Positions 3,711 to 43,959 of a DNA stretch of 64,000 bases are shown piece after piece (within the stretch, counting starts at the first letter, position 1; each line of letters starts with the position of its first letter). Position numbers and translations under genes: made by a program. Source of the DNA: Octopus sinensis (Eukaryota); contig NW_021832609.1 of the NCBI RefSeq assembly GCF_006345805.1, positions 41,971-105,970 of the forward strand. The letters are read 5' to 3'. The notes under the pieces were generated by a model, which saw only the letters and a program-made list of their open reading frames with translations, did no database searches and was not told the DNA's origin.

Positions 3711-3749
3711 ATGCGGCACGTGCTAATGCAATTTCATCCAAGCCAAACA
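3711..3749 (+). CDS. Probable 39-nt phase-1 exon of host gene (x-AARANAISSKPN)
   Basis: Acceptor tttttcattttctcttttaaAG, donor GTAAGT, length divisible by 3 and open in phase 1, like the cassette exons downstream. Confidence 0.55.
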
Positions 3750-12850: not shown

Positions 12851-13570
12851 GTCTCTAGTTCTGGCAGTGACTCAGCTATTAGAGCAAGGTCATCAGCATA
12901 GAGGAGCTCCCAGATGCAGCCCCTCTTGAATTTCTCTGCTATTGCTTGGAGGACTATAGTGAATAAGAGGGAGCTGAGGACTGATCCTTGATGAACACAT
13001 ACTTCTATCTGGAATTCTTCACCATACTCGTTGCCAACCCTCACCTTACTGACAGCATCTATGTACAGGGCTTGTACAGCTCTTACCAACCTCTTCTCTA
13101 TCCCCAGTTTCTGCATTGATCATCAGATAAAGAATTGGGGGACACTGTCAAAGGCTTTCTCCAAGTCAATAAAAGCTATGTACAGAGGTTTATGTTTGGC
13201 TAGATATTTCTCCTGCAGTTGCCTTACCAGAGATATAGCATCAGTGATGCTTCTCCCTGGCATAAAACCAAACTGCATCTCATCTAGGCTAACTGTCTCC
13301 CTAATTAGTTGAGCTATGACCCTCTCTGTAACTGTCATCACCTGATCCGATAATTTGATACCCCTCTAATTATTTCTGTTTAAAGCATCACCTTTACCTT
13401 TGTAGTGGTTGACTATGGTGCTGCTACACAAGTCATTGGATATGAACCTTTCATGAACTACCTGATTTATGATGCAGGTGACAAGACCATAAACCACACC
13501 ACCTGATATTTTAAGCATCTCAGAAGCGATTCCTGATGGGCAAGGTGCTTTCCCTGTCTTCATGTCTATC
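12851..13570 (-). mobile_element. RTE-clade LINE RT fragment
   Basis: FGFMPGRSITDAI, FIDLEKAFDSVP, HQGSVLSSLLF, LLYADDLALIAES. Confidence 0.9.
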
Positions 13571-13574
13571 TGTG

Positions 13575-13775
13575 TTTGTCCCCCACAAAACATCACTTGA
13601 CAACTGATGTTGATGTGTTTACATCCCTGAAACTTAGCAGTTCAGCAAAAGAGACCAATATAAGTACTAGGCTTACAAAGAATAAGTCCTGGAGTTGATT
13701 TCTTCAACTAATGCAATGCTCCAGCATGGCCACAGTCAAATGACTGAAACAAATAAGGAATAAAAGAATAAATAA
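13575..13775 (+). mobile_element. SINE body and 3' end
   Basis: CAGCAAAAGAGACCAATATAAGTACTAGGCTTACAAAGAATAAGTCCTGG..CCAGCATGGCCACAGTC..GAATAAAAGAATAA; related to 10085-10275 and 22625-22985. Confidence 0.65.
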
Positions 13776-20135: not shown

Positions 20136-20571
20136 AATTCATAAATGAGGGCAAAGGAAAAAATTTCTAATGCCAAATATGCCGAAAAATTGGACATATT
20201 GTCCATTAACCATATAATTTTTTCACAATATGCACGCTACTTGAAAAAAGGTTGACAGAAATTTCTAAAAAATTCCATTATTACCGTATCGGACCGATTT
20301 CAGAGTTAGATCCTTACTCATACCCATGGGTATGAGTAAGTATCTCATTTATTTCTTTTGCCACATGTATCACTGATGAAGAGAGGGCTCTTAGTAGCTA
20401 ACTCTGAAATCGGTCCGATACGGTAATAATGGAATTTTTTAGAAATTTCTGTCGACCTTTTTTCGAGTAGCGTGCGTATTGTGAAAAAATTATATGGTTA
20501 ATGGACAATATGTCCAATTTTTCGGCATATTTGGCCTTAGAAATTTTTTCCTTTGCCCTCATTTATGAATT
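20136..20571. repeat. Palindrome with 174-bp arms (20136-20309 / 20398-20571); spacer holds a perfect 28-nt palindrome (20313-20340)
   Basis: Arms are reverse-complementary with few mismatches. The inner sequence CTTACTCATACCCATGGGTATGAGTAAG is its own reverse complement. Confidence 0.92.
20367..20421 (+). ncRNA. Type I hammerhead ribozyme motif
   Basis: CTGATGA (20373-20379), stem II AGAG/CTCT, GAAA (20406-20409), ATCGGT stem III, GUC (20413-20415), stem I GTATC/GATAC with an A-C mismatch next to the core. Confidence 0.65.
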
Positions 20572-20584
20572 ATATATATATATG

Positions 20585-20616
<32 letters not shown>

Positions 20617-22204
20617 TATATACATATATATGTAATATGGTATAATTATAAACAGGGCAAATTTTAGCCATTTCTCTGCAGACTGAAAAAATACAATTAA
20701 CAACCTTAATCGATTTTCGAACCTTATTGGGTTCTCATTGGAGACATCTATATCATTCTGACAGTCTCCAGAGAAGCATACATACACACACACACGCACG
20801 CACACACACACACACACACGCACATATACATATATATATACACATACACACATTCGTGCTGTATACTCGACCTCCACTCTCATATCTTCTTCCATTCTGT
20901 ATTTATAGTGATGATACTTCAGAATCAGGGATGCTGGTGTGTAAGGTTGTAAGAGTTTGGGAGAAAAGGAGGTGAATACAAACCATGGAATAAAACAGGT
21001 CAAATGAACATAGGAGTTTTAATAAATCATGAACAGGAAAGGATTTACGTATAGAAGTGGACACAGTAAGAATAAGAAATAGATGCTGACTGAAATAGTA
21101 CAAAGGAAAGGAAGTGGCAACTCACAGTACAGAGATGGCAATATGTATGGTATAAATGTATGGTGTATTCTGTTTTTGTCTCTTACAGCAGCAGAATAGC
21201 ACTTTCGACAGGAGAATGATGGAGGGCTCATTATAGGGTCATGAGTTGTGGGGCTGGCAGTTGTGATTGGTGGGGAAATTAAGAAAGGGATACCGATTTG
21301 AAGGGTGGAGGATCATTTGTGGTATGAACATGGAATGGATGTCTGTTGGAAGTGGCAGCAGATGTTAGATGTGGTGAGTAGTGGAAAAAGGGAAAATCAA
21401 TAACAATAGTGGAGGTTAGCTCATTGATGGTAAGGATAAAGGACAAATGTCAATAGGAGGTGAACCATACTTAGGAGATGTTTTTAATGGCATGAAGAGG
21501 AAATGTGAAGAAGAGAAAGATGCAGTTTAGAAGAGCTGATTTAGTTCGGTTTCTTGGGGTAGCATGTGTGAAAACATTGTTGCATATAAAATATACACTA
21601 TATAATAATTTGCTTGTTTGTTCACCTGTTATACTTTAGTTTGTTAGAGAGGTGGAAGTGGAATGAGTGAGAGGTTGAGTAAGAATGAGAGAAAGAGGGA
21701 GAAATGTGGGTAGAGAAGCAAGAAGAAGAGAGGAGTATAATAATACACTAAGGTCAAATGCATCACGTAGTTAGTTGAAGGGGGAGGCAAAGAGCAAGAC
21801 ACAACTATGATGAGAGGAAAGTGGGAGAGAGAGAGAAGTGTTAATGACTTACTGTCGGGTGGAAAGAGAAAGAGGGAAATGTTAAAGACATGAAGAGGGG
21901 AATTACATGGTTAAAATGTTTGTTGAAGAGGTAGAGAGAAAGAGAGAAATATAAGGTGCTTAGCAGAAGGAAATTTCAAAATCATATACTATTTTGCAAC
22001 TGGAAGTGAAATCACTTAGCAAAATACAAATAACAATCATCCTTTCTTTCTTAAATAGCTTTGCTTAATCTCTTTCGTTCTGTGGAATTTCCACAGATCT
22101 CACTAGTATTTTATTTTTTTTAGTTACTTTTTGTACAATATCAAAATATTAAAACTATCCTCTCCAAACAATAAATGTGCACATCTTTATATAATTTTTT
22201 GAAG

Positions 22205-22264
22205 CTAATGAAGAGCAATATGCTGAAGCTAGTGGGCCCAGTTATTTAGAATTGAAACCAGCAG
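22205..22264 (+). CDS. Cassette 1 exon a, 60 nt, phase 1 (x-NEEQYAEASGPSYLELKPA)
   Basis: ttttttgaAG / GTAAGT, symmetric and open; homologous exons at 24640 and 34043. Confidence 0.8.
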
Positions 22265-22483
22265 GTAAGTATAAACAATATTGTTAGTACACAGCATGAT
22301 CTTAGAAATTATCTTAAACATTAACAGAAAGCTAACAGTCATGAATGTATCATTCTCTAACTTTTATCTTTTAATATGTGTGTATGAGTGTGTTTGAGTC
22401 TGTCTCATTAGCATTTATTATTGTAGTATCAACACAATACTAACATAACGCTATTTATTGTTTTTATTTCTAATTTTTTAAAG

Positions 22484-22525
22484 ACATGAAGATTTCTTAC
22501 GTTAATGTTTCAAGGAAACCTGATG
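22484..22525 (+). CDS. Cassette 1 exon b, 42 nt, phase 1 (D-MKISYVNVSRKPD)
   Basis: tttctaattttttaaAG / GTAAGT, symmetric; YVNVS is conserved in all three copies. Confidence 0.8.
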
Positions 22526-22624
22526 GTAAGTATATAAGCAATCGAATAATAAAATTTCATTCATTAGAGCAAGAGTTAGCAAAATTTTGGTTCACTCTTT
22601 CTTTGAGTAGTAGAGGCAGCTTAA

Positions 22625-22985
22625 TGCATGTCTTTCATTTGTTCCAGTCATTGGACTGCAGCCATGCTAAGGCACCACTTTCAAGGGTTCAGTCCAACAA
22701 ATCCACCCGAGTACTTATTATTTTTAAGCCTTTTACTTATTCTATTGGTTTCTTTTGCTAAACTGCTAAGTTATGTGGATGTGAACAAACAAACACAATT
22801 GTCAAGTGGTGATGGGGATCAAACGCAAAGGCACACACACTCCCTTATATATATACCAAATCCATTCACAAGATTTTGGTCCGCCCAGGATTATAGCAGA
22901 ATACACTCGCCCAATGTGCCTCATCATATGACGAAACCCAGACCCATGTGTTTGGAAATTAAACTTCTTACCTCACAGCCACACC
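22625..22985 (-). mobile_element. SINE inserted in cassette 1 intron
   Basis: Absent from the homologous position in cassettes 2 and 3 (after GCAGCTTAAT). Confidence 0.7.
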
Positions 22986-23774
22986 TAAAAACCTTTCAAA
23001 ATATTAAAATTCCATTGCATATACGATAAACTTCTTACAGATATTCCTATTTAACTCTGATATTTTACCTTTTTATCAATCCTTACCCTTAATGATGTAG
23101 TTCATAAAAATTTATTTTGTAAGCCTTAATTTGTACAAAAAATCCAAATAATTAAGTAATAATGAATTCAGTAGATATTTGCCAAGGCATGAGACACAAT
23201 GAATGGGAATAAATTTGCAATAGTAAATGTGATTAACTGTTCTCCTCCAGTATCCAAAATCACTCCTGTTTATTTATAACTCTAGCAAGAAATTTATCTT
23301 AGAAAAACCCTTATTGCTCTAAACATATTTGTGAATAGCTTCCCTTAATGTTAATATCAGAACCAAATATTGAATTGATGGAAATAGTACATACTGTACT
23401 AAATATTGACAATTGAATTAGTGTTAGTACATTCTGAGATTATATCCTAGAGAAGTACACTTTGTACAATCAGCCTCTCAATAAGTTCTACTTTTACATA
23501 ATCATTAGCACACTCAGCATCCAAACTCTATCTACTAATCCCTACAGAACACTGAAGAGATGGAGGATATTGTGGCCTCTTGGCAGAAACGCCGTAAGGA
23601 ACTGATATTTTATGTTTTACTTGTATATATTTGTGTAGCACACAGTCTTTGAATGTGTATGTATTTTTATAATACTGCCTTTTGTTTTGGAATAGATAGA
23701 CTTAATAGAATGCCTACTGGCTGATCTATGTAATTTTTGTATCCCCTCCATTTTCTTTTTGCCGGATATATATA

Positions 23775-23980
23775 TATCATTCGCCATGATAGATCGCAAG
23801 CCACTAAACCTTTTTTATTTCTCTCCCTCTTTTTATATTCGCTCCCTCTTTTTTCTGTGTTCCTTTCTGTCAGAGAGCATATGCTCGAAACGTAAAAGAC
23901 TTTCTCACTTCCTGAGCATTAAACATCTGTTTGTTGTTTACACACCGATCTTTGTCTTTTGTTTTTTTTTTTGTAAATTC

Positions 23981-23985
<5 letters not shown>
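23775..23985 (+). mobile_element. Solo Penelope pLTR-like fragment, same family as 11005-11200
   Basis: CGCCATGATAGATCG..AGCCACT, GCTCGAAACGTAAAAGACTTT, CCTGAGC and ACATCTGTTT are shared with the reverse complement of 11030-11205. Confidence 0.8.
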
Positions 23986-24021
<36 letters not shown>

Positions 24022-24160
24022 TATAAATGAGTGAAAATTTACTGGTAAGTGTGTTAAATAATAAGGCAATAAAAGAGAATGACTCTCCCCAGACACCACA
24101 AAATATGCTTCAACACACAAACTCATATAAAGAATTTTGCAAACCAAATACAAAAATGAA

Positions 24161-24493
24161 GAATAGAAATGGCTTTTCTGATAATTTTTCCACTTCAATA
24201 ACTGAATGCTTATAAGTTTACAATCAGGTAACACCTGAATTCAGTTAGTCAACTAAGGCATGATTTAGGGCAGTTGTTGAGGCTATTGCTTTTGCTTTCC
24301 TTTTTCTTGAAGGTTTCCACAACAACAGTCCAGGAAGGAACTACAAAAAGAAAAGGAAAGCAGAAGCAATGGCCTCAGCAACTGCCCTCACCCATGCCTT
24401 GGGTAACTATTTGAATTCAGGAGTTACCTTTCTCTAAACTTATAAACACCTAATAATTAAAGTGGAAAATTATCAGAAAAGCCATTTCTATTC
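24161..24493. repeat. Foldback / MITE-like element, ~145-bp arms
   Basis: GAATAGAAATGGCTTTTCTGATAATTTTTCCACTT...GGGCAGTTGTTGAGGC mirrored by GCCTCAGCAACTGCCC...AAGTGGAAAATTATCAGAAAAGCCATTTCTATTC. Confidence 0.85.
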
Positions 24494-24639
24494 AGTTTTT
24501 CAGATAACTAATACTGTACCAAGGGCTTTCTATTTCTTTTTCTACTATCTACATATAGCTGCTACTTTCTGTGTATCATCAAAATATTTAAATCACACCC
24601 TCCAAACAATAAATATGCCTTTTATTTTATTTCTTGAAG

Positions 24640-24699
24640 TTGTGGAAGAACAATGTGCTGAGGTTAGCGAGCCGAAATATTTAGAAATGGGACAACGAA
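24640..24699 (+). CDS. Cassette 2 exon a, 60 nt (x-VEEQCAEVSEPKYLEMGQR)
   Basis: tttattttatttcttgaAG / GTAAGT, phase-1 symmetric. Confidence 0.75.
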
Positions 24700-24945
24700 G
24701 TAAGTACAATCAATATTGTTAGTACACAGCATGAGCTTAGAACCTATCTTTAAAATAGACAGACAGCGAACTATTATGAAATATGTCACTCTCTAACTTT
24801 TGTGTATTTAATATGCATGTATGTATGTGTGAGTGTGTTTGAGTGTATCTCATGAGTATTTATTATGGTAGAATCAGTACACAGCTATCTTAATTTAAAT
24901 ATTATTTATAGCCATGCTATTTGTTCTTTTTCTAATTTCTTAAAG

Positions 24946-24987
24946 ACACGGATGGTACTTACGTTAACGTTTCAAAGAAACCTGCTG
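24946..24987 (+). CDS. Cassette 2 exon b, 42 nt (x-TDGTYVNVSKKPA)
   Basis: ttctttttctaatttcttaaAG / GTAAGT, phase-1 symmetric. Confidence 0.75.
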
Positions 24988-25896
24988 GTAAGTATATAAG
25001 CAATTTATTAACAAAAAATTACATTCATTAGAGCAAGATTAGCAAATATCTCATTCTTTCTTTGAGTAGAATATGCAGCTTAATATATATGTATGATTGA
25101 AATTAAAACTTTGAAGGTGTTAAAATTTCATTGCATATGCAAAGAACTTCTTGCAAACATTCATATGTAACTTATATTTTACACCTTTATTTATCTTACC
25201 TTTATTAATGCAGTTCATATGCATATATTTTTAAAGTTTTATTTAAACAAATAACCCAAATTGGTATACAACTAATATTGAATTCAGTAGATACTTGCTT
25301 AGACATGAGACACAAAAAATGGAACAGATTTCCAAAGGTAAATGGGATCAGCTTTTCCCCTTCAGTATCCAAAATCACTCCTGCTTATGGATAACTCTAA
25401 CAAGAATGTAATCTCAGAAAAACCCTTATTGCTCTAAACATATTTGTGAATGGCTTCTCTTAATGGTAATATCACCACCAAATATTGAAGTGAGGGAAAA
25501 AGTACAAACTGTACTAAATATTGACAGAATTAAATTTACTGTTAGTACATTCTGAGATTATATCCCAGTGAAGTAAATTTTGTACATTCAGCCTCTCAAT
25601 AAGTACTACTTTTACATAACCATTAGCATTTTTCTTGTAGAATAGAATTTTGGGTGCCACTTTACTAAGGAACCCTCTTTCCAAAGTCTAATTTTGAAAT
25701 GGCATATTAACCAAAATTACTCTTTGTTTACTCTTGTTCATACCAAATAGATTTATTAGCCAATACTTTTCTTTTATGCAATATGTAAATGAGAGGATGA
25801 AGAACATATTCAGTACATGGACTCTGACTGGATTTAAGTATTTTTTGTTTCTAAATACATATATGTGGATATATATAATTATATTTGAAGAAAAAA

Positions 25897-26185
25897 GAAT
25901 AGAAATGGCTTTTCTGATCATTTTTCCACTTCAATAATTAGATGTTTATAAGTTTACAAACAGGTAACTCCTGAATTCAGTTAGTCAAACAAGACATGGG
26001 TGAGGGCAGTTGTTGAGGCCATTGCTTCTGCCTTCCTTTTTTCTTGAAGGTCCTTCCACAGCAACAGGCCAGTAAAGAACTTTAGAAAAGGAAAGCAGAA
26101 GCGATGGCCTCAGCAACTGCCCTCACCCATGCCTTGGTTGACTATCTGAATTCAAGAGTTACCTTTTTCTAAACTTATCCACATC
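25897..26185. repeat. Second copy of the foldback element; right arm interrupted, remainder at 33835-33885
   Basis: Matches 24161-24445, stops at AAACTTATCCACATC and resumes at GACATCTAATTATTAAAGTGGAAAA. Confidence 0.8.
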
Positions 26186-26597
26186 AGATCTTGTTTGTTT
26201 CATTCATAAAATCTGCATCTCTTAAAAGGAAGTCAAATATCTGAAAATCGGTTATATTGATGTAGTTTACATGCTTATTCCTGTGAAGCCATGTACTTGT
26301 GGAGAAAAAATTTGATGAAAACTTTAAAAAAAACTGTGTATTTTTAGCCAATAGTGAGACAGAAATTTTCTGTGATGTAGCATTCTCAACTTAGTGGTGT
26401 CAATTTTAATGTTTTACCCTGTGAAATTTATAGTTTAGCATCTGTGAAATGACCTGTTCATTGTAGGTTTCGAAATAAACAGAAATACCTGATGAAGTCA
26501 ACATCTATCATCTTACTGTTTCTTTTCTCTCTTCATTGATTTCTGTATGTTTTGTATATTTTTATTTTTATTTGTTATATTAATATAAGTGAATAAT

Positions 26598-28070
26598 TCC
26601 GGGTAGAAGTAGGGGTCCACCAAGGTTCAGCCCTCAGTCCCTTTTATTCATCATAGTCGTCCAAGCAATAACAGAGGAATTCAAGACGGGTTGCCCCTGG
26701 GAGTTCCTCTATACTGATGACCTGGCCCTCATAGCAGAATCACTACCGGAACTAGAAAAGAAATTTTGGGTGTGGAAGTTGGGTTTAGAATCAAAAGGCC
26801 TTATAGTAAATGTAGCGAAGAACAAAGTTATTTAAGTAGGAAGGTGAACTCATCACACACACCCTTAGGTAGGTGGCCCCGCTCAATCTGTAGAAAAGGT
26901 GTAGGTAGAAACTCCATAAGATGTACCCAATGTAAGCTATGGACGCATAAGAGGTGTAGCAACATCAGAGGAAAACTGAGAAGATAGCTTTCATACGCAG
27001 CAGATACACAGGGGCAATAGACACAATGGATACTCAGAAAACAGATTCCACCACACTCCAGGGGGAGAAACTAGAAGTAGTTGATCGTTTCCACTACCTA
27101 GGTGACCAAGTTAGTAGTGGAGGTGGATGCTCAGAGAGTGTCACCACTAGAATACGAATAGCCTGGGCAAAGTTTAGAAAGTTTCTCCCCCTACTGGTGA
27201 CAAAGGGTCTCTCGCTCAGAGTGAAAGGTAGATTGTATGACACATGTGAGAAAACTGCCTTGCTTCAAGGTAGTGAAATATGGGATGTGACAGCAGAGGA
27301 CATGTGTAGGCTTGAAAGAAATGAAGCTAGTATTATCCGCTGGATGTGTAATGTCAGTGTGCACAGACGACAGAGTGTAAGTGCTCTGAGAGAAATGCTG
27401 GACACAAGAAGCATCAGATGTGGCATGCAAGAAAGATGTTTGCGCTGGTATGGTCATGTACTATGGATGGATGAGGAGAGATGAGTGAAGAAGTGCCACT
27501 CCCAAACAGTTGAAGGAATCCAGGGTAGAAGTAGACCCAGGAATACATGGGATGAGGTGGTCAAGCATGACCTTTGAACATTGGGCCTCACAGAGACAAT
27601 GATGAAATACTGAGATCTCTGGAGATATGCTGTGACTGCGAAGACCTGACAGATAACGTGAGTTCATGGCTGTTTCCTGCACCAGCTTCACATAGCAGCC
27701 CCAACCCATCCAAAGTACCTTCGACTGCAGGACGGCCTGCTGTGCTTACCTTGGATTGTAGGGTGACCTGCTGTGCTTAAGGAGACCTACTGAGTCAAAT
27801 ACATCAACATCAAAATAAAAATCAAATGGAAATTGTAGTTGTGATACCTGTGCCTGTGGCACATAAAAAGCACCATCCGAACATGACCGATGGGTTCCGT
27901 ACCGGTGGCACGTTAAAAGCACCCACTACACTCACGGAGTGGTTGGCTTTAGGAAGGGCATCCAGCTGTAGAAACACTGCCAGATCAGACTGGAGCCTGG
28001 TGTAGCCTCCTTGCTTCCCAGACCCTGGTCGAACCATCCAACTCATGCTAGCATCGTTAAATGATGATGA
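26598..28070 (+). mobile_element. 5'-truncated RTE LINE with 3' tail
   Basis: HQGSALSPLLF, LYTDDL, LEVVDRFHYLGDQV, RIRIAWAKFRKFLPLL, LRWYGHV; (GAT)n tail at ~28060. Confidence 0.9.
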
Positions 28071-28270
28071 TGTATGTATGTATGCGTTTGTTTCACATTA
28101 GTTGTTACAGTTGTACTTTATGAAGCCATTGATTTCTACACACAGGAATCAATATGGGTTGCTTATGTCAGTATTATGTATACCTGTTATGTATTTGTGT
28201 ACATCACCAATATATATGTGCATGTGGATGTATGTATTCATATATAAGTTTATATGTACATTAATGCATT

Positions 28271-28311
<41 letters not shown>

Positions 28312-28329
28312 AATGGGGGTGTCTGTCTC

Positions 28330-28860
28330 TAAAACTCTAAGTTTGAGTAATGTTTTCATGCTTGGATTTGGAAACTACAATAAGAATAATCAATCCAATA
28401 GACTTTCTAAATTCAGCAGAGTTTATTTCTATTCACTTATCTTTATAGACCCAAGTTCCTTCAGCATTTGTCCATATTTGGATTTCCAGATTTGGCTTCA
28501 TGAATAATATAAATGATGAAAGAGCTGAATCCTAAAATCTAGTTGCAAAAAGGGAAGGTCCAAGCTGTTCATGTAAACATTGTTGGGTGGAGTTCTTCTT
28601 GTGCCCTTTCAATAGTGTTCTTCCTGAGTCCTTTCAGTTTCAGACTTATCCTTCAAATAATGTTCTACATGCATCATCGAAGGATTTGAAGAATCATTTT
28701 GTTCTCATCATATCCAATTCTGAACAGGCAATATTGGCATGATCACTTTCATTATCATCTTCAGGAAAAGAAGATTCATCACAAATAATTTTTTCCCATT
28801 CTTTATGGAAGCTGGATAACAATTGTGAAATCTCTTCAAGGCTTAGCTTTTGATTCTTTG
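28330..28860 (-). mobile_element. Possible piggyBac transposase 5' remnant
   Basis: Acidic N-terminus (KLSLEEISQLLS..DESSFPEDDNESD) followed by RTPPNNV.HEQLGPS, resembling the piggyBac N-x-L-x-x-x-PGP motif. Heavily decayed. Confidence 0.4.
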
Positions 28861-29589
28861 ATATTTCGTGGAAGGATTACAAAGGACAAATGAATAGTTG
28901 GCAGGCTGTCAATGTTTTATACTTGTTGAATTATGATGCAATACTAATTGTTTGTTTCATAAAAATGATGCACTAAATAGTAGTATTGCATCATCTTCAG
29001 ATGTCTTAGTAAATGCTGTTAGAGATCTTTGCCACCAGTATGGGATGAGGTTGTGCAAACTGATCTCAAAATGCTGAGCCTTACAGAAGAGATGACAATG
29101 GATTGGGAGGGTTGGTGCCCTGCCATGCTCAAGAAGACCTGCCCATAGCAAGCAGAACACCTACCCAAAACCTGGTCACAGTATCTCAACGTGCTGTGTG
29201 CACTGAGGATACAACTTTTTTGTAACCCCGTAGTCCTGTATCATATTCTGTCGAGTTTTTGCTAGAAGACTATGAAAATCAATGTTTTTTTTTTCTATTT
29301 GCTCAAAAAAGTTCACTCATGACTAACTTTGAATTTTTATATTTGGTTGCATTTGGGTGGGTTTCCAAAAACTAGGACCCTGATAGAATAATAAACAATA
29401 AAGGAAAAAAGATCCATAACTGTTAAAAGAATTATATTCTGCATTCCAGAATAATAAAAAGAAGGTAAGTCATATAAAGTCAAATTAGTCAATAGTCAAG
29501 TTGCGGCAAGTCTAATAGAGAGAATGAAACTCAATGGCAGGTTAGCTTTGTTCTTGCATGTGGTGTGTAGTTCTTGCATGACCTTAATT

Positions 29590-31100
29590 GCTCACTCACA
29601 GCATTAATTGCTTCTGCTGATCTTTAGTTTTGAGAGCTCTTGTTTCCAGTGATTTGTCAAGCATTTCAAAGAAGTCTTCTAAGAGTAGTAAGGTTTGTGA
29701 TAGCTCTGCATAATCTTCAGCTCTATAACCAGTGGTCTGCACAGTCATATGAGATGAAGTGGCAGACCATATGCAATCTCTCACATGTGGCGTAAGTAAA
29801 AATATAAGAAGGGCTAGGATTGCTTGCAAATTCCATCTGGCATTACTGATATTTGGGATTTTCTGAAACTTGATGAAAGGGATGTCTCTCTTTCCATGGA
29901 AGAACTTGAAGGCATGGGTTAAGTGAAACAGGAACTTCATATCATATCTCCAACCAGCTTGATCTACTATGACGATTTCCATACTGGAAGGAGCCTTGAA
30001 GTTCTTCATAACTTGTCATGAGTTCTTTGACAAGAAAATATCCGATATTGAGTGAATTGCTTGCACTAGCTAGCTCCTCATCCATGAAAATATGCAGGAT
30101 TCTGTCCAAGACATGGTGTTTGTTGCTCATGAATTGTGGCTCATCATAGCATTTGCTCAAGAAATTCTCTGCAGTCTAACCACTACCCAACTCTTTCATC
30201 CGGTATTCACACTTGTCGTATCAACAATAATCATTAAGATTTCACCCTAAAAGTGTAATTCATCCAAGATGCTTTTCAATCCTGCAATGGTCTCGGCCTT
30301 GTCACCACACAGCTTCAGAGCAGCCAGCTTAATTACACTTGTTTTATCTTGATGATTACCACTTGATATTCATTTCCGTCAATATGTTTACCATTAAAAT
30401 GCAGGTCCCATTTCTGATTGCTAGTGTATTGATCAAGTGTTTCTTCATTACACCAGCTTTCTCAAACAGTGCATTGTAAAATGCCTTGCTGACTAGGAGC
30501 TGGGATATCAATGTCCTCCTCTGACAATTCTTTGCAGATTTTCGCAGCTTTGTAGGTAGAGACATTTGTTTCAGTTACAAATCTCATACCAATTGCAGAT
30601 TTGTTGTTCCTTCTTGTGGAAGAATAAGTGCCATCACTATCTATATCGTTTTGATCAACTCTGTCATCTTCACCATAATTGTACTCTTCAATCTCTTCTT
30701 CTTCAGAGTCACTGTCAGTACCAGGGTTGCTGAGTTTGATAAAGAATGGGAGGCTTCAGCATCCGAGCATCTTCTCTTGGAATTATGGATAGTGTGCTTG
30801 CTTGCAGCTTTGCTTGTCGAATAACCCATTTTGCCCTGGCTTTGGAGTTGGATAGAATAAAGCATTTTATCATCAGCATTAAGCCATTCATTGCAGACTT
30901 TGTTGATATTGAACAGTTCTTCTAATGGCTCAAATTGTCTTTTTTAGGTGCATTTGTCATACAAATGAAGCACATTTTTGAGCTTGGAAATGATTGGAAA
31001 ATTCAGCTTATCTCTCCACAGTAGTGTCACCTCTTTCAATAATTCTGTCACTCTCTTCTTTCTGCATTTATTGATTTCCCAAAAAAACTGGTACCGACCA
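29590..31100 (-). mobile_element. Decayed DDE transposase of unresolved superfamily (hAT/P/Kolobok-like)
   Basis: Fragments IIVDTTSVNTG, HHVLDRILHIFMDEEL, NISNARWN..AILALL across several frames. Confidence 0.5.
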
Positions 31101-31479
31101 GCAACCTTCTCCTTGAGGCATTTGAATTCTGCTGTTCAGTGAGGCTTCATCTACAGACACACGATCTCTAGATGAATGGGACTGGAACAGCACCAGATGC
31201 AGTGTTTATGTAGGCAAATAAATACAAAAGTGTCTGGAAGCATCCCTGATCTGGTCACTGATATATGTGGAGTATGTTATAACTAAGAACAATGATTGCA
31301 GTGATTTCGGGTTCACCAGAACTCACATAACATCCAAGTGTTACTTGGATCACAGAATGATTCACAGCAAGGCATTTGTTAAACTATATGGAAAGAGGCC
31401 ACTAAAATCCAGTTTACATCCAAGAATAAACATTGCTTCTTTAAAAATCTAGAAATGATAAAAAATTTTGAAATACATT

Positions 31480-32215
31480 TAAATTCAAAGATTGCAGAAA
31501 TAGAGGAATGCCTAAAATATGGTGGCACAATATACATGACAGCATCAAATCATCTGCTGAAGTAGTTCTAGGATTTGTGAAGCACAAACACCAACAAGAA
31601 TGATTCTCAAATTAAACCTCTCCTAGAAACTTTGCACAAGAGACAAAAGACATGGATCTCAGACAAATACTTGCCAACATCCAGATTCCTATACATCTCT
31701 AGAGAAAATCTATGCAGAAAACTGCATGAGATGAAAAGTTTGGTGGACGAAACAAGCCCAAGAATTGGAACAGGCTGCTAACTCTCACAACTTGAGAACA
31801 CTGTATAACATTCTGAAAAATGTGTTTGGTCCAAAAAAGGTAGTACAGAATAGATTCTGTACTACCTCAAATGATGTAACACAACTCATAAGAAGGAAAG
31901 ATGAAATTCTAAAAAGATACCTGAACACTTTACATCTGTATCAAATCAAGAATCCACTAGCAGTGCTGAAGAACTAGTGGAACATCCTTCCTTGGAAGAG
32001 ACAAGTACTGTTATTGAAAAACTTTCCAATGGTAAAGATCTTGGACAAGACGATATTCCCATAGAGGTGTCCAAGCATGGTTGCAGTCAAATTGTAAATA
32101 AGCTGTGCAAATTGATCTGTTTGATCTGGGAAACTGGATCTGTTCCCCAGCAGTTCAAAGATGCATGTATAATGCACCTGTACAAAAACAAAAGGAAGAA
32201 GAGTCAATGTGATAA
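31480..32215 (+). mobile_element. RTE-BovB-like LINE fragment
   Basis: EQAANSHNLRTLYNILKNVFGPK; PSLEET..IEKLSNGK..GQDDIPIEV; IWETGSVPQQFKDACIMHLYKNK. Confidence 0.75.
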
Positions 32216-32989
32216 TCCCTTTTCCAAAAGAAGAATAAAGATAATCAAAAGAAAAGGAGAAATGTGATGTTATTGGCAAGCTATTCTAGTATAATTTATT
32301 TTATTGATACCTGATGGATTAAAGTTAAAGCTGACTTGTGTGAGATTTGAATTCAGAATGCAGAGGAACATAACTAAATAGAACAAAGCATTTAGTCTGG
32401 CACTCCATTCTGGACATAATTTTTGGAAACAACTGTCCTTCAAAGTTCCATACCTCATGGAAAAAGAAAAGTGAGATGGGCAGGTTTCCTTCATTTTGTT
32501 TTTAATCATTTTATGTTTCATACAATGGAAAATTTCCTCACAATCTCTGTCTTTCACATCCCAACCCGTAATTCTGTGCCCTTTTTTCCTTCCATATCAT
32601 TTAGGAAATAATTTTGATTCTGATTCATTCTGCCAGCTTCAGTTCCATGGGGTTTATTATTTCTACCTCAGCTGGATCCAAACCTACCAATTACATTACT
32701 TGCCCACCACGTGTACAGTTTTGCTTCTACATCTCTGACAGGTTTGTGGGAGGAGTACACGACCAGGTGATTAATAAGTTCACATCATAATCCTGACATG
32801 TTAGTATTGAGTTCAATCTAACTCCATCACACCTTGAGCAAGAATCTTTCAGCCTAGTTTTGGTTTGATCTTTTTTTATATTTTGTCTTCTACCTATGTT
32901 GGGTTTGAAAAAGGGACATTGCCTATGCCCTTCACAGACCATCTGGATGAATGAGGTTAATGATTAAGGACATTGATGTGCCTTGTGAA

Positions 32990-33290
32990 CCTTCATAAAC
33001 CAACATTTGTGGGAAAGATATGAGCAGGGAAGGATTTCTTGAGGGAAACATTTTGGGGAGGAAAAACTGAGCATAGCCATAAGTATGAGGCCTTTTAGGT
33101 AGGGCTGGATGGGGTTGGACATAAGAGGGATAATGAAAAGAGAAGAGGCAAATGGGATGGGAACGTTTGAGAGGTGAGGTGAGCTCAGCTAGCTGCAAGG
33201 AGCAGAAGCCATATAGTACAGTAGAAATGACAGAGAGGGGGGACAGAGAATGTCTGGGCATCAGAGAATGGAGCACATCTAGGAGTGACT
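32990..33290 (-). mobile_element. CR1/L2-like LINE 3' fragment
   Basis: SLSPL..YGFCSLQLAELTSPLKRS resembles the CR1-group C-terminus. Confidence 0.45.
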
Positions 33291-34042
33291 TTATAATTTA
33301 TTGCATCCACCTCTGTTTTCAAAATCTCCTTCAGAGTGGTACAAAAATGGCTTGAATGTGGATGTGGCTATTCAAAGCAACAGTAAAAACAGAAAAACAC
33401 AGAAAAACTTCATGAAATATATGTAAAATATATATGAAAAATATATAAAAGAATAAGTAAATATTAAAAAATTGATGAAAAACATTTACAATAAAATTCT
33501 AATTGATAGATATAAATCTTCCAGAAAATTTTAAAAAAACAGTGATATACACAAACAAAACATGTGGATGAAGTGAATCTCGTTGTGTAAAGAATCAGCA
33601 CAATGTGTGGTTAACATGATAACTAGCTGTTAATGCCTCACTGTCTGTTGATTGGCTAAAATTGATCAGATTTTCCCAACTTTAATTCCAATAACATCAG
33701 ATTCTTTAATTTATGAGATAAAGTAATTGGTTGAGCATAATCAAAATACAGAACAGTATCAATACACCAAAATTGAAAACAAGCTGAGCAAAATTAAAGG
33801 GAGCTGATTTTAGGTATGAAACTAACTAGATTCTAGACATCTAATTATTAAAGTGGAAAAATTATCAAAAACGCCATTTCTATTCAGATTTTCAAATATA
33901 TAATACTGTACTAATGGCTTTCTATTTCTTATTCTACTATATATACATATATATAACAGCTACATTCTGTGTATCATCAAAATATTCATATCATCATCTC
34001 CAAACAATAAATATGCCTATTTTTTAAATTAATTTCTTGATG

Positions 34043-34102
34043 CTGTGGAAGAACAATGTGCTGAGGTTAGCGAGCCGAAATATTTAGAAATGGGACAACG
34101 AA
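34043..34102 (+). pseudogene. Cassette 3 exon a with mutated acceptor (AG to TG)
   Basis: Nearly identical to 24640-24699 with GTAAGT intact, but preceded by ttcttgaTG. Confidence 0.75.
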
Positions 34103-34348
34103 GTAAGTACAATCAATATTGTTAGTACACAGCATGATCTTAGAACCTATCTTTAAAATAGACAGACAGCTAACTATTACGAAAAATGTCACTCTCTAAC
34201 TTTTTGTGTATTAATATGCATGTATGTATGTGTGAGTGTGTTTGAGTCTATCTCATTAGTATTTATTATGGTAGAATCAGTACACAGCTATCTTAATTTA
34301 AATATTATTTATAGCCATGCTATTTGTTCTTTTTTTAATTTCTTATAG

Positions 34349-34389
34349 GCATGGATGGTACTTACGTTAACGTTTCAAAGAACCTACTG
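34349..34389 (+). CDS. Cassette 3 exon b, 41 nt (1-nt deletion; x-MDGTYVNVSKNLL)
   Basis: ttcttatAG / GTAAGT intact; AAGAAACCT has become AAGAACCT. Could be a pseudoexon, a frameshifting exon or a sequencing indel. Confidence 0.5.
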
Positions 34390-34699
34390 GTAAGTATATA
34401 AGCAATTTATTAAGAAAAAATTACATTCATTAGAGCAAGATTAGCAAATAGTTTGGCTCATTCTTTCTTTGAGTAGAATAGCAGCTTAATATATATGTAT
34501 GATTGAAATTAAAACTTTGAAGATGTTAAAATTTCATTGCATATATAATAAACTTCTGCTGATGATAAATATACATTTTACATATATGTTTAAAAATCTC
34601 ATCACGCAATCAAACCAATGAAAGAGCCTTTATCTGGTCGCTCAACATGCTAAAAATAGCAGCCAAAGTATCCCCCTTCCTAAATCACACGTGCAAATA

Positions 34700-37025: not shown

Positions 37026-37088
37026 GTTACCAATGAAGGTCTATGTTCTACAGATGAACAAAAGGAACCTAGAAGCTTCCAGAACTGA
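37026..37088 (+). CDS. Candidate terminal coding exon of host gene
   Basis: Strong acceptor tttttattctttcattttgtAG. Phase 1 gives xYQ*, phase 0 gives VTNEGLCSTDEQKEPRSFQN*. Followed by AT-rich sequence with AATAAA at ~38017 and ~38068. Confidence 0.4.
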   Translation, partial: VTNEGLCSTDEQKEPRSFQN

Positions 37089-43316: not shown

Positions 43317-43959
43317 TTTTACTTGTCACAGTCATTGAACTGGAGCCATGATAAGGCACCATTTTGAGGGGTCTGGTTGAACAAATTACCCCAGTAGTTA
43401 TGTCTTGTCAGATACTTGTTCTAGCAATCTTTTTTTACCAAACTGAGAATGTAGGCAAACCAACTCTGGTGATCAAGCAGTGTGAGGACGGACAAACATA
43501 AACATGAACACACACACACAACACACACATGCAACAGGATTCCAGCCAGTTTTCGTCAATCAAATTTATTCACTAATCATCGGTTGATCTCGGATTACAA
43601 TGGAAGACACATATGCAAAGTGCTGCACAGTTCATAGATGTTTATACATCTTTATACAGAGTTGATGTATAAACATCATATAATATATCCTTGGTATTTA
43701 AGGGCTTAATTATAAAAAAAAAAACATCATTAAACTTCACAAGTTTATTGTAATAAATAAATATGTAAGGAATATACTTGTTTGCTTACACAAAATTGAC
43801 TAAAATGATGGTTGAGAGTGACATATTTTCAGCATATCATATGTATGTATATGTATGTATGTATGTATGTATATATGCATGTATGTATGTATGCTTGCAT
43901 GCATGTATGCATGTATGAAAGCATGCATGCATGCATGTATCTGTGAGTGCATGTGCATA

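What the first reader, a model, noticed from the sequence alone, without database searches (positions are those of the whole stretch)
22205..34389. Triplicated two-exon cassette building a tyrosine-motif signalling tail
Seen in sequence: three copies of a 60-nt + 42-nt exon pair with homologous introns. Copies 1 and 2 have intact AG/GTAAGT sites and phase-1 symmetry, and are invisible to the ORF track. Peptides are NEEQYAEASGPSYLELKPA-DMKISYVNVSRKPD and VEEQCAEVSEPKYLEMGQR-xTDGTYVNVSKKPA. Established knowledge: pYxN binds Grb2-type SH2, YxxM binds PI3K p85, and (I/V/L/S)xYxx(L/V) is the ITIM consensus, matched by ISYVNV. Copy 2 lost the first Tyr (Y to C), changed YLEL to YLEM and lost the ITIM match. 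Inference: this is the cytoplasmic tail of a receptor or adaptor that gains and retunes docking sites by modular exon duplication, with in-frame skipping possible. The ecto/TM or catalytic part is not in this window, so the gene is unidentified.
Basis: partly seen in the sequence, partly recalled or inferred. Interest (0 to 1): 0.75.

Follow-up and report, generated by a model that had tools for sequence, protein, structure and literature searches.

The report
Octopus Ig-receptor tail mini-exon cassettes
The repeats are real coding mini-exons that build the tyrosine-rich intracellular tail of an uncharacterised octopus immunoglobulin-type membrane receptor, one of a gene family found here only in Octopus that changes its number of putative signalling docking sites by duplicating, converting and losing such exons.

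Summary
Three homologous 60-nt + 42-nt exon pairs lie at 22205-22264/22484-22525, 24640-24699/24946-24987 and 34043-34102/34349-34389. Pairs 1 and 2 have AG/GTAAGT sites and phase-1 symmetry. Pair 3 is broken: acceptor AG changed to TG, and a 1-nt deletion. The gene is identified. Residues 74-173 of RefSeq XP_036355079.1 (Octopus sinensis LOC115229375, "uncharacterized") match the window's exons, apart from residue 74 (spans a splice junction) and the junction into 3b. A further tail exon lies at 3711-3749 and the terminal exon starts at 37026. Homologues in O. sinensis, O. vulgaris and O. bimaculoides are multi-Ig-domain, single-pass membrane proteins. Their tails carry 1-23 copies of two mini-exon types: "a" (..EEQxAExSEPxYLxM..) and "b" (DMDxxYVNVSxKPx). 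Across the family the a-Tyr (40/41), the b-Tyr (44/48) and the b-Asn at +2 (44/48) are nearly invariant. The first a-Tyr and the ITIM -2 position are not. The core reading is therefore supported: a receptor tail that gains pYxxM (p85-type) and pYxN (Grb2-type) sites by modular exon duplication. The ITIM is not conserved. Whole-exon conservation does not exceed intron background, and pair 3 is decaying. Docking function is inferred from motifs only, and no transcript data were available.

The parts
3711..3749 (+). Upstream tail mini-exon ('exon 0', 39 nt, phase 1-1) encoding (N)AARANAISSKPN. Its last base joins CT of exon 1a to give Thr.
   Evidence: Exact match to P0006 residues AARANAISSKPN. 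The sites are tttaaAG|AT...ACA|GTAAGT. The O. bimaculoides orthologue is at L003 29639-29677.
22205..22264 (+). Cassette 1, a-type exon (60 nt, phase 1-1): NEEQYAEASGPSYLELKPA.
   Evidence: Identical in O. sinensis chromosome copy L001 and O. vulgaris L002. One substitution in O. bimaculoides.
22484..22525 (+). Cassette 1, b-type exon (42 nt, phase 1-1): DMKISYVNVSRKPD. It is the only b-module among 48 with a literal ITIM match.
   Evidence: No counterpart was found at the O. bimaculoides locus.
24640..24699 (+). Cassette 2, a-type exon (60 nt): (V)VEEQCAEVSEPKYLEMGQR. Canonical AG and GTAAGT sites.
   Evidence: O. bimaculoides 2a and 3a keep the same TTGAAG|TT acceptor. The L001 and L002 counterparts have TG.
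24946..24987 (+). Cassette 2, b-type exon (42 nt): NTDGTYVNVSKKPA.
34043..34102 (+). Cassette 3, a-type pseudo-exon. The frame is open but the acceptor AG is mutated to TG (cttgaTG|CT). It is skipped in model P0006.
34349..34389 (+). Cassette 3, b-type exon with a 1-nt deletion (41 nt): GMDGTYVNVSKNLL. It shifts the frame of the terminal exon. Model P0006 uses it through an implied non-canonical acceptor 6 nt downstream of the AG.
37026..37088 (+). Terminal coding exon (ttttgtAG|GTTACCAATGA...). In phase 1 it reads (G)YQ* with the stop at 37034-37036. In phase 0, after the frameshifted 3b, it reads VTNEGLCSTDEQKEPRSFQN* with the stop at 37086-37088.
   Evidence: Family proteins end in GYQ, SYQ or DYQ, or in the alternative frame.
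22125..24499 (+). Duplication unit 1. It holds cassette 1 plus shared intron blocks, interrupted by insertions at about 22626-22988 and 23511-24158.
24563..26178 (+). Duplication unit 2.
33948..34557 (+). Duplication unit 3, 92% identical to unit 2.

Best explanation
SHOWN.
- The three cassettes are the 3' coding mini-exons of an Octopus gene. The RefSeq model is LOC115229375 (O. sinensis, unplaced 106-kb scaffold). Its close relatives are LOC115212249 and LOC115212247 on chromosome CM016863.1, and LOC106880794 in O. bimaculoides.
- The gene belongs to a multigene family found here only in Octopus. Members have an N-terminal signal-like segment, several Ig domains, one transmembrane helix, and a cytoplasmic tail.
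- The tail is a string of two kinds of phase-1 mini-exon. Type 'a' is 60 nt: xxEEQxAExSEP[KR]YLxMKxP. Type 'b' is 42 nt: [DN]MD[GD]xYVN[VI]SxKPx.
- Module number (1-23) and order differ between paralogues and species. An a-intron-b unit with an intron of about 220-250 nt is the ancestral duplication unit.
- In this window cassettes 1 and 2 are intact. Cassette 3 is decaying: the 3a acceptor is lost and 3b is frameshifted.
- Copies within a genome resemble each other more than their orthologues do. Acceptor mutations and an 11-bp intron deletion are shared across copies. Both point to gene conversion or unequal crossing-over.

INFERRED from motifs and established SH2 specificity.
- After receptor clustering, a Src- or Syk-type kinase phosphorylates the two nearly invariant tyrosines, which sit after acidic residues.
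- pY-L-x-M in the a-module recruits a p85-type (PI3K) SH2 domain.
- pY-V-N-V in the b-module recruits a Grb2/Drk-type SH2 domain.
- The tail would then act as a multivalent PI3K and Ras-MAPK docking scaffold. Its valency is set by how many modules the gene carries and, because every module is phase 1-1 and a multiple of 3 nt, by how many are spliced in.
For: Identity of the exons.
- P0006 (XP_036355079.1) matches the window at 1a, 1b, 2a, 2b, 3b and the terminal exon, and at exon 0. The only departures are residue 74, which spans a splice junction, and the junction into 3b.

Receptor context.
- P0012, P0018, P0024 and P0029 join the same tail exons to Ig domains, with I-set and Ig_3 Pfam hits.
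- A single hydrophobic helix precedes the tail in 10 of 11 long members.
- In O. vulgaris L002 the Ig-domain gene model ends in exon 1a.

Module architecture.
- The same 60-nt and 42-nt exons, with tcttgaAG or tcttaaAG acceptors, GTAAGT or GTGAGT donors and phase 1, occur at paralogue LOC115212119 after Ig and transmembrane exons.
- The a-b intron is recognisably homologous even there.
- Genomic census. Of 17 a-modules, 16 are open, 11 have AG and 15 have GT. Of 16 b-modules, all have AG and 14 have GT.
- All O. bimaculoides exons have canonical sites.

Motif constraint.
- a-Tyr 40/41. Position +3 is M in 30 and L in 8.
- b-Tyr 44/48 and Asn at +2 44/48, the most conserved b columns.
- Neighbouring columns vary freely. 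The invariant +2 Asn is specific to Grb2-type SH2 recognition. A plain YxxPhi sorting signal would not require it.

Module number.
- 1 to 23 modules per predicted protein, in different orders.

Concerted evolution.
- Window c2 versus c3 is 92.3% and O. bimaculoides c2 versus c3 is 91.2%. Orthologous pairs are 88-90.5%.
- O. vulgaris c2 is a chimera, and an 11-bp deletion is shared across copies.
Against: No transcript data could be examined. All proteins cited are automated predictions, and several are clearly flawed. Examples are LINE-derived C-termini in P0002, P0005 and P0012, a 780-kb gene span for P0003, and a frameshifted transmembrane exon in P0024.

Two RefSeq models imply non-canonical acceptors: TG in P0001 and GG in P0006.

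Whole-exon conservation is no higher than intron conservation.
- Copy 1 versus copy 2: exons 0.67 and 0.79, intron 0.78.
- Window versus O. bimaculoides: exons 0.85-0.98, flanks 0.76-0.95.
- dN/dS is about 1.1 for copy 1 versus copy 2 and 0.7-1.2 for pooled paralogue comparisons (2.67 for the single 1b-versus-2b pair).

In the O. sinensis chromosome copy and in O. vulgaris, the 2a and 3a acceptors are TG and one donor is AT.

The window's exon 1a has YLEL, not YxxM.

SH2 binding, phosphorylation, expression site and ligand are all untested. The module instances used for the logos are related by descent and are not independent.
Confidence: 0.65

Rival explanations
1. Only cassette 1 (with exon 0 and the terminal exon) is functional in this gene. 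Cassettes 2 and 3 are duplicated pseudo-exons drifting neutrally, so the apparent 'retuning' of motifs is decay, not adaptation.
For: - Copy 1 versus copy 2 dN/dS is 1.1.
- Exon identity is no higher than intron identity.
- Window 3a lost its AG and 3b has a frameshift.
- In L001 and L002, four further 2a/3a acceptors are TG and one donor is AT.
- Copies homogenise by gene conversion, which can keep frames open without selection.
Against: - Window 2a and 2b have canonical AG and GTAAGT sites and open frames.
- O. bimaculoides 2a, 2b, 3a and 3b are all canonical and open. Its RefSeq model uses 2a, 2b and 3b.
- The motif cores KYLEMGQR and YVNVSKKP are unchanged, while the substitutions fall outside them.
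- Four predicted proteins include cassette 2 (P0001, P0006, P0008, P0024).
- For cassette 3 in this window the rival is probably right. For cassette 2 it probably is not.
Confidence: 0.2
2. The tyrosines act as YxxPhi endocytic or sorting signals (AP-2 mu2 binding) of a scavenger or adhesion receptor, not as phosphotyrosine docking sites.
For: YLEL, YLEM and YVNV all fit YxxPhi. Multi-Ig ectodomains resembling adhesion molecules fit an endocytic or adhesion receptor. The weak PDB hits are to contactin, DSCAM, ICAM-1, Robo and CEACAM.
Against: The near-invariant Asn at Y+2 (44/48) and Met at Y+3 (30/41) are not required by YxxPhi. They are the specificity residues for Grb2-type and p85-type SH2 domains. 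Acidic residues precede both tyrosines, as in tyrosine-kinase substrates. Ten to twenty tandem sorting signals would be without precedent.
Confidence: 0.1
3. The a+b pair is an ITAM- or ITIM-type immunoreceptor motif that recruits tandem-SH2 effectors (Syk/Shark-like kinase or SHP/Csw-like phosphatase).
For: - Yxx[L/M]-x8-YxxV puts the two tyrosines 12 residues apart, at the upper edge of ITAM spacing.
- The pair is encoded by two exons.
- Exon 1b ISYVNV fits (S/I/V/L)xYxx(I/V/L).
- pY-V-x-V also suits SHP-2-type SH2 domains.
- A related tail (P0022) ends in TIYADL.
Against: [quoted passage not shown]
- Here the spacer is 8, the +3 residues are M/L and V, and the boundary lies between the modules.
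- The a and b modules occur independently, in runs such as aaa and bbb.
- The ITIM -2 position is G or D in 36 of 48 b-modules.
Confidence: 0.1
4. The exons are an annotation artefact: open frames with splice-like edges inside a tandem repeat that is never expressed as protein.
For: There is no transcript evidence here. Several models are chimeric or use non-canonical sites. The exons show no conservation above the introns.
Against: More than 30 module copies were examined at five loci from three species. They keep exact lengths of 60 or 42 nt, phase, open frame and mostly canonical sites despite 25-40% divergence. They always lie downstream of Ig and transmembrane exons. Motif residues are selectively conserved. 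Independent annotation pipelines (NCBI for two species, a separate one for O. vulgaris) call them.
Confidence: 0.05

Closest known systems
PECAM-1 (CD31) and similar IgSF receptors whose cytoplasmic domains are encoded by several short, alternatively spliced exons
   Same: Multi-Ig type-I membrane protein. The tail is made of small exons, each of which can carry one tyrosine motif. A 19-residue exon (exon 14) containing a tyrosine is alternatively spliced and changes function (PMC2132561 abstract). The octopus a-exon also encodes about 19-20 residues with one key tyrosine.
   Different: No detectable sequence homology: PECAM-1 is not among the PDB sequence hits of P0003. The PECAM exons are unique, not tandem copies of two module types. 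Its motifs are ITIMs, whereas here they are YxxM and YxN. Octopus tails reach 23 modules.
YxxM / YxNM costimulatory and adaptor motifs (CD28 YMNM, DAP10 YINM, CD19 YxxM), and multi-YxN scaffolds such as LAT and Gab/Dos
   Same: The predicted docking logic is the same, from established SH2 specificity. pYxxM is read by PI3K p85 SH2 domains and pYxN by Grb2/Drk/SEM-5 SH2 domains. Several copies give a multivalent scaffold. The DAP10 motif YINM is cited in PMC4536121.
   Different: Those proteins carry one or a few unique motifs and are unrelated in sequence. Here the two specificities sit on two separate, independently duplicating mini-exons within the receptor's own tail. Binding has not been tested.
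Classical ITAM signalling subunits (CD3 chains, TCR zeta, FcR gamma, CD79)
   Same: Two tyrosine modules are encoded by two exons. TCR zeta carries three such units in tandem (PMC4536121), which parallels the triplicated cassette.
   Different: The ITAM consensus, spacer and exon-boundary position are not met (see the membership test). ITAM subunits are short chains with a charged transmembrane residue. Here the motifs are on the multi-Ig receptor itself.
Lineage-specific invertebrate IgSF receptor clusters (for example the Hydractinia Alr family, PMC9546547, and Botryllus fester/uncle fester, PMC11507803)
   Same: Clustered IgSF membrane genes in invertebrates. For Botryllus, the abstract in the search listing reports activating and inhibitory signals generated by the receptors.
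   Different: I saw these only in search listings and did not read the papers. No homology was tested. The octopus family's ligand, tissue of expression and polymorphism are unknown.

Membership tests
Immunoglobulin superfamily type-I membrane receptor | Ig-fold ectodomain(s) | tested here: met
   Pfam I-set, Ig_3, ig and C2-set_2 hits above cut-off in P0003, P0007, P0009 and P0012. These hits are in family members and sister models, because no Ig exon lies in the window.
Immunoglobulin superfamily type-I membrane receptor | Single transmembrane helix between the ectodomain and the tail, followed by basic residues | tested here: met
   One segment with mean Kyte-Doolittle hydropathy above 2.2 (for example IIIGCTVGIVLLLIIMGLLTY, followed by KRR) in 10 of 11 long members. 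It is absent from P0024, where the transmembrane exon appears to be read out of frame. It is encoded by its own exon in L004.
Grb2-type SH2 docking site | Y-x-N core | tested here: met
   YVNV in window exons 1b, 2b and 3b. Across 48 unique family b-modules, Y is present in 44 and N(+2) in 44.
Grb2-type SH2 docking site | Phosphorylation-dependent binding to a Grb2/Drk SH2 domain | not testable with these tools
   Needs peptide-binding or pull-down experiments.
PI3K p85 SH2 docking site | Y-x-x-M core | tested here: inconclusive
   Window 2a and 3a have YLEM (met). Window 1a has YLEL (not met). In the family, M is at +3 in 30 of 41 modules, L in 8, V in 2 and I in 1. Binding was not testable.
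ITIM | (S/I/V/L)-x-Y-x-x-(I/V/L) | tested here: not met
   Met literally only by exon 1b (ISYVNV). Window 2b and 3b have G at -2. Across the family, -2 is G (20) or D (16) of 48. The ITIM is therefore not a conserved property of the module.
Classical ITAM | D/E/NxxYxxL/I-x7-YxxL/I consensus | tested here: not met
   Here the pattern is Yxx(M/L)-x8-YxxV. The consensus is taken from PMC4536121.
Classical ITAM | [quoted passage not shown] | tested here: not met
   There are two exons, but the boundary falls three residues after YLEL/M, between the two modules. The a and b modules also occur separately.
Modular, skippable cytoplasmic mini-exons (PECAM-1-like architecture) | Symmetric phase, and exon lengths that are multiples of three | tested here: met
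   39-, 60- and 42-nt exons, all phase 1-1. The exception is the damaged 41-nt exon 3b.
Modular, skippable cytoplasmic mini-exons (PECAM-1-like architecture) | Alternative inclusion observed in transcripts | not testable with these tools
   Only predicted isoforms differ. P0024 omits exon 0, P0006 omits 3a, P0012 joins 1a to 3b, and P0008 omits 3a. No RNA data were available.

The most novel reading that the evidence does not exclude
The window samples a fast-evolving multigene cluster, found here only in Octopus, of immune-type (or self/non-self or neuronal recognition) IgSF receptors. Their signalling strength would be tuned genetically by birth, death and gene conversion of two docking-site mini-exons, and possibly per cell by exon skipping. 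This would be an invertebrate counterpart of vertebrate LRC, Siglec and FcRL-type receptor families, built from different parts. The window's locus is as diverged from the O. sinensis chromosomal copy as the O. vulgaris orthologue is. That would fit deep haplotypes or copy-number polymorphism at such a cluster.
Probability: 0.25. Interest if true: 0.75.

Novelty: new variant of a known kind. Interest (0 to 1): 0.5.

Why it matters
Cephalopods have no described repertoire of tyrosine-motif immunoreceptors, and the genes found here are all labelled 'uncharacterized'. I found no paper naming them.

The family gives a concrete, testable candidate for how an octopus cell-surface Ig receptor couples to PI3K and Ras pathways. 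It is also an unusually clean example of short linear motifs evolving as discrete, duplicable mini-exons. One exon corresponds to one docking site, counts range from 1 to 23, and intact and decaying copies sit side by side.

It also flags annotation problems. Receptor genes are split into an 'Ig part' and a 'tail part'. LINE fragments are exonised in some models. Non-canonical junctions appear in others. These would mislead expression and orthology analyses.

Tried and rejected
1. I looked for Ig or transmembrane exons in the window with an Ig-motif scan and with tBLASTN of family proteins. None was found. Only exon 0 at 3711-3749 turned up.

2. I tried to extend synteny upstream of 20731 into L001 and L002. 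Only dispersed repeats matched. Alignment breaks at the (TA)n/(CA)n tract at 20563-20850.

3. Whole-exon selection tests gave too few sites to decide. These were NG86 dN/dS and exon-versus-intron identity. They do not show purifying selection beyond the motif cores.

4. I tested whether the strongly conserved a-b intron folds into a conserved RNA structure, as with Dscam-type docking and selector elements. The energy was -8.8 kcal/mol, the covariation term was positive, and only 3 of 40 pairs showed compensatory changes. Rejected.

5. I could not fetch DNA for P0003 and P0024, because their gene ranges of 780 kb and 140 kb are too long. P0006's own contig was not on record.

6. Literature searches for the gene identifiers and for octopus ITIM or IgSF tails found nothing relevant.

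7. The ITIM and ITAM readings were considered and rejected as family-level properties.

8. P0010 and P0011 from the HMMER search are unrelated repeat proteins and were discarded.

Full report
**1. The observation**

| Exon | Coordinates | Length | Splice sites |
|---|---|---|---|
| 1a | 22205-22264 | 60 nt | ttgaAG / GTAAGT |
| 1b | 22484-22525 | 42 nt | ttaaAG / GTAAGT |
| 2a | 24640-24699 | 60 nt | cttgaAG / GTAAGT |
| 2b | 24946-24987 | 42 nt | ttaaAG / GTAAGT |
| 3a | 34043-34102 | 60 nt | cttgaTG (AG lost) / GTAAGT |
| 3b | 34349-34389 | 41 nt | tatAG / GTAAGT, 1-nt deletion |

All intact exons enter and leave in phase 1. They translate to NEEQYAEASGPSYLELKPA-DMKISYVNVSRKPD and VEEQCAEVSEPKYLEMGQR-NTDGTYVNVSKKPA. 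The 1-nt deletion in 3b shifts the frame.

The similarity is not chance. Copy 1 versus copies 2 and 3 is 75% identical over about 530 nt (E = 1e-95). Copy 2 versus copy 3 is 92.5% identical. The repeat units extend beyond the exons, to 22125-24499, 24563-26178 and 33948-34557.

**2. Which gene this is**

A search with the spliced peptide found two Octopus predictions. A full HMMER scan with one of them found a family.

One member is P0006 = XP_036355079.1, 'uncharacterized protein LOC115229375 isoform X2' of Octopus sinensis, on a 105,970-bp contig. Its residues 74-173 match the window at 1a, 1b, 2a, 2b, the frameshifted 3b and the terminal exon. Two points depart from an exact match. Residue 74 is Thr, whose codon spans the exon 0/1a junction. 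The model's junction into 3b omits the two residues (GM) that the canonical acceptor would encode.

Residues AARANAISSKPN match a further 39-nt phase-1 exon at 3711-3749. The window is therefore most likely part of that O. sinensis scaffold.

The model's more upstream exons (GVKRNKETSSAKG and TEDNYATISDEAL) are not in the window. Neither are any transmembrane or Ig exons.

The terminal exon begins at 37026. In phase 1 it reads (G)YQ-stop. After the 41-nt exon 3b it is read in phase 0 as VTNEGLCSTDEQKEPRSFQN-stop.

**3. What the tail belongs to**

Sister models attach the same exons to a receptor body.

- P0012 (O. vulgaris) reads I-set Ig domain, then IIIGCTVGIVLLLIIMGLLTYIFYKRR, then exon 1a.
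- P0024 (O. sinensis LOC115212249) reads many Ig domains, then TEDNYATIPDEAL, 1a, 1b, 2a, 2b, 3a, 3b and GYQ.
- P0029 is the O. vulgaris gene immediately upstream in L002. It ends in exon 1a plus read-through to a TAG.
- P0018 carries ...YKRRGVKRNKETSSAKGTEDNYATISDEAL, identical to the start of P0006.

Pfam finds I-set, Ig_3, ig and C2-set_2 domains. Ten of eleven long members have exactly one strongly hydrophobic helix just before the tail.

The best solved-structure relatives of the ectodomain are generic IgSF adhesion molecules: contactin-1, DSCAM, ICAM-1, Robo and CEACAM5. Their E-values are weak, from 1e-5 to 1e-2.

A word-based search with a full-length member returned 19 proteins. All named ones are 'uncharacterized' or 'Ig-like domain-containing'. 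No paper names these genes.

**4. Architecture across the family**

At paralogue LOC115212119 (L004), 75 Mb from the L001 locus on the same chromosome, two Ig exons and a transmembrane exon come first. They are followed by 60-nt 'a' exons (tcttgaAG...GTGAGT) and 42-nt 'b' exons (tcttaaAG...GTAAGT), all in phase 1. One a-b pair there has a 236-nt intron that is still alignable to the window's a-b introns. The a-intron-b unit is therefore old.

The modules are nevertheless used independently. Predicted proteins carry from 1 to 23 modules, in orders such as abab, baaabba and bbbabbbbbaab.

A census was made of five loci from three species.

| Module type | Copies | Open frame | AG acceptor | GT donor |
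|---|---|---|---|---|
| a | 17 | 16 | 11 | 15 |
| b | 16 | not tabulated (window 3b is frameshifted) | 16 | 14 |

Most copies are intact and a minority are decaying. That is a birth-and-death pattern.

**5. What is conserved**

Logos were built from 41 unique a-modules and 48 unique b-modules.

- a consensus: xxEEQ[Y/D/H/C]AExSEP[K/R]YL[E/C]MKxP. The second Tyr is present in 40 of 41. Position +3 is M in 30 and L in 8.
- b consensus: [D/N]MD[G/D]xYVN[V/I]S[K/R/Q]KPx. Tyr is present in 44 of 48 and Asn at +2 in 44 of 48. These are the two most conserved b columns.
- The first Tyr of the a-module is present in only 20 of 41.
- The residue two before the b-Tyr is G or D in 36 of 48. The ITIM match of exon 1b (ISYVNV) is therefore an oddity of that one exon.
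- YLEL in exon 1a is the minority form, and YLxM is the consensus.

Whole exons are no better conserved than their introns.

- Copy 1 versus copy 2: exons 0.67 and 0.79, intron 0.78.
- Window versus O. bimaculoides: exons 0.85-0.98, flanks 0.76-0.95.
- dN/dS is about 1.1 for copy 1 versus copy 2. Pooled paralogue comparisons give 0.7-1.2, and the single 1b-versus-2b pair gives 2.67. Ortholog pairs give 0.1-0.4. All rest on very few sites.

Substitutions avoid the motif cores. For example, all seven 2a differences from O. bimaculoides lie upstream of KYLEMGQR. This is the pattern expected of a disordered tail in which only short linear motifs are constrained. It also means that selection on cassettes 2 and 3 specifically cannot be demonstrated here.

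**6. State of the three cassettes**

Cassette 1 is identical in the O. sinensis chromosome copy and in O. vulgaris. Its 1a differs at one base in O. bimaculoides, which has no 1b at that place.

Cassette 2 is intact in the window. Its counterparts in L001 and L002 read cttgaTG|CT at the acceptor, as does every copy-3 a-exon of O. sinensis and O. vulgaris. One O. vulgaris donor is AT.

O. bimaculoides 2a and 3a both keep TTGAAG|TT. AG is therefore ancestral, and the TG version is a derived state that has spread between copies.

Three observations point to spreading between copies by gene conversion or unequal exchange.

- Some copies share an 11-bp intron deletion.
- One O. vulgaris copy is a chimera.
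- Paralogues within a genome (92.3% and 91.2%) are more alike than orthologous pairs (88-90.5%).

RefSeq models P0001 and P0006 imply TG or GG acceptors. Whether these reflect real transcripts or alignment artefacts cannot be decided without RNA data.

**7. Mechanism**

Shown: the exons, their gene, the receptor context, the modular family architecture and the selective conservation of YxxM and YxN.

Inferred from established SH2 specificity: the tail is a multivalent phosphotyrosine scaffold. a-modules would recruit a p85-type SH2 (PI3K) and b-modules a Grb2/Drk-type SH2 (Ras-MAPK). The specificity rules are that pYxN is read by Grb2, Drk and SEM-5, and pYxxM by p85. Valency would be set by module number and, potentially, by in-frame skipping.

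The invariant +2 Asn and +3 Met argue against a plain YxxPhi sorting signal.

The ITAM reading fails on consensus, spacer and exon-boundary position. [quoted passage not shown] It also fails because the modules occur separately.

The nearest architectural analogue is PECAM-1. Its cytoplasmic domain includes an alternatively spliced 19-residue exon with a functional tyrosine (PMC2132561). No homology to it was detected.

**8. Verdict**

Four corrections apply.

- The gene is identifiable: a RefSeq-predicted, uncharacterised octopus IgSF receptor.
- The ITIM is not a conserved feature.
- YLEM is the consensus form, not the derived one.
- Cassette 3 is a decaying copy.

The exons are already present in automated annotation. 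The family and its two-module tail grammar appear undescribed. I rate it a new variant of a known kind, of moderate interest.

Noticed in passing
window 22276-22298 and 24711-24733 (also copy 3, L001-L004): The intron block CAATATTGTTAGTACACAGCATG lies just downstream of each a-exon donor. It is better conserved than the exon itself, and AGTACACAGCATG is invariant in all copies aligned, including the paralogue 75 Mb away. One O. sinensis chromosome copy has lost 11 nt of the block. The 15-20 nt after each b-exon donor (GTAAGTATATAAGCAAT) are likewise identical across the nine window, L001 and L002 copies aligned; the distant paralogue diverges in the last few bases. This could be an intronic splicing element for mini-exon definition. 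No conserved RNA structure was found.
   Followed up: partly
window 31867-32264 (+), in the intron between cassettes 2 and 3: An open reading stretch resembling the N-terminal part of a non-LTR retrotransposon ORF2 (...KLSNGKDLGQDDIPIEV...). It gave no Pfam hit. O. vulgaris gene models P0002, P0005 and P0012 splice it onto the cassette exons, giving chimeric proteins. P0005 even fuses an adhesion-GPCR-like gene to the tail.
   Followed up: partly
window 119-1924 (-), 12289-13116 (-), 46785-49263 (-), 58935-59369 (-): Transposon remnants surround the gene. They comprise a hAT dimerisation domain plus DUF4371, a reverse-transcriptase fragment, reverse transcriptase plus integrase core (LTR-type element), and zf-RVT.
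   Followed up: yes
whole window versus L001 (O. sinensis chromosome CM016863.1) and L002 (O. vulgaris): The window is 95.4% identical to the O. sinensis chromosomal locus. The O. vulgaris orthologue is 96.6% identical to that same locus. If the window is O. sinensis, as the P0006 match implies, it is either a paralogous copy or a haplotype older than the species split.
   Followed up: partly
P0024 (O. sinensis LOC115212249), not in the window: The segment ARNTYGNNYWLHCRNCIIINNNGFLLIY sits where relatives have EIPMEIIIGCTVGIVLLLIIMG... It looks like the transmembrane exon read one base out of frame, and the protein has no hydrophobic helix. The cause is either a pseudogene, an assembly indel or a model error.
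   Followed up: partly
window 37026-37088: The terminal exon is used in two reading frames across the family. In phase 1 it gives (G/S/D)YQ-stop. In phase 0 it gives a 20-27-residue ending (VTNEGLCSTDEQKEPRSFQN, or ITSEGPCSSDEQKEPRT... in P0009). The window's 1-nt deletion in 3b switches it into the second frame.
   Followed up: partly
L001 12172 and 21716; window about 34355: RefSeq models imply non-canonical 3' splice sites. P0001 uses TG at two different offsets on identical sequence, and P0006 uses GG. This could be real TG-acceptor use or an alignment artefact.
   Followed up: no
window 20563-20850: (TA)n/(CA)n microsatellite tract. Alignment to both other assemblies starts just inside it, at window 20731. 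Upstream of that point only dispersed repeats match within the 3-8 kb available.
   Followed up: partly
window 22626-22988 (ORF 22628-23029, +, 133 aa): An insertion in duplication unit 1 that is absent from unit 2. It carries a 133-codon ORF with no Pfam hit. Part of it resembles sequence at window 43317-43372 and 13723-13754, so it is probably a dispersed repeat.
   Followed up: partly
L003 (O. bimaculoides) 28786-28826 and 29639-29677; P0022 C-terminus: Membrane-proximal tail exons also carry tyrosines that come and go. TEDDYATISDEAY and VERAYGISSKPS in O. bimaculoides correspond to TEDNYATISDEAL and AARANAISSKPN in the window's gene. A paralogue tail (P0022) uses a different repeat (DDVEELYAKVNKP) and ends in ...NYAELEF...TIYADLILDS, an ITIM/ITSM-like ending.
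   Followed up: no
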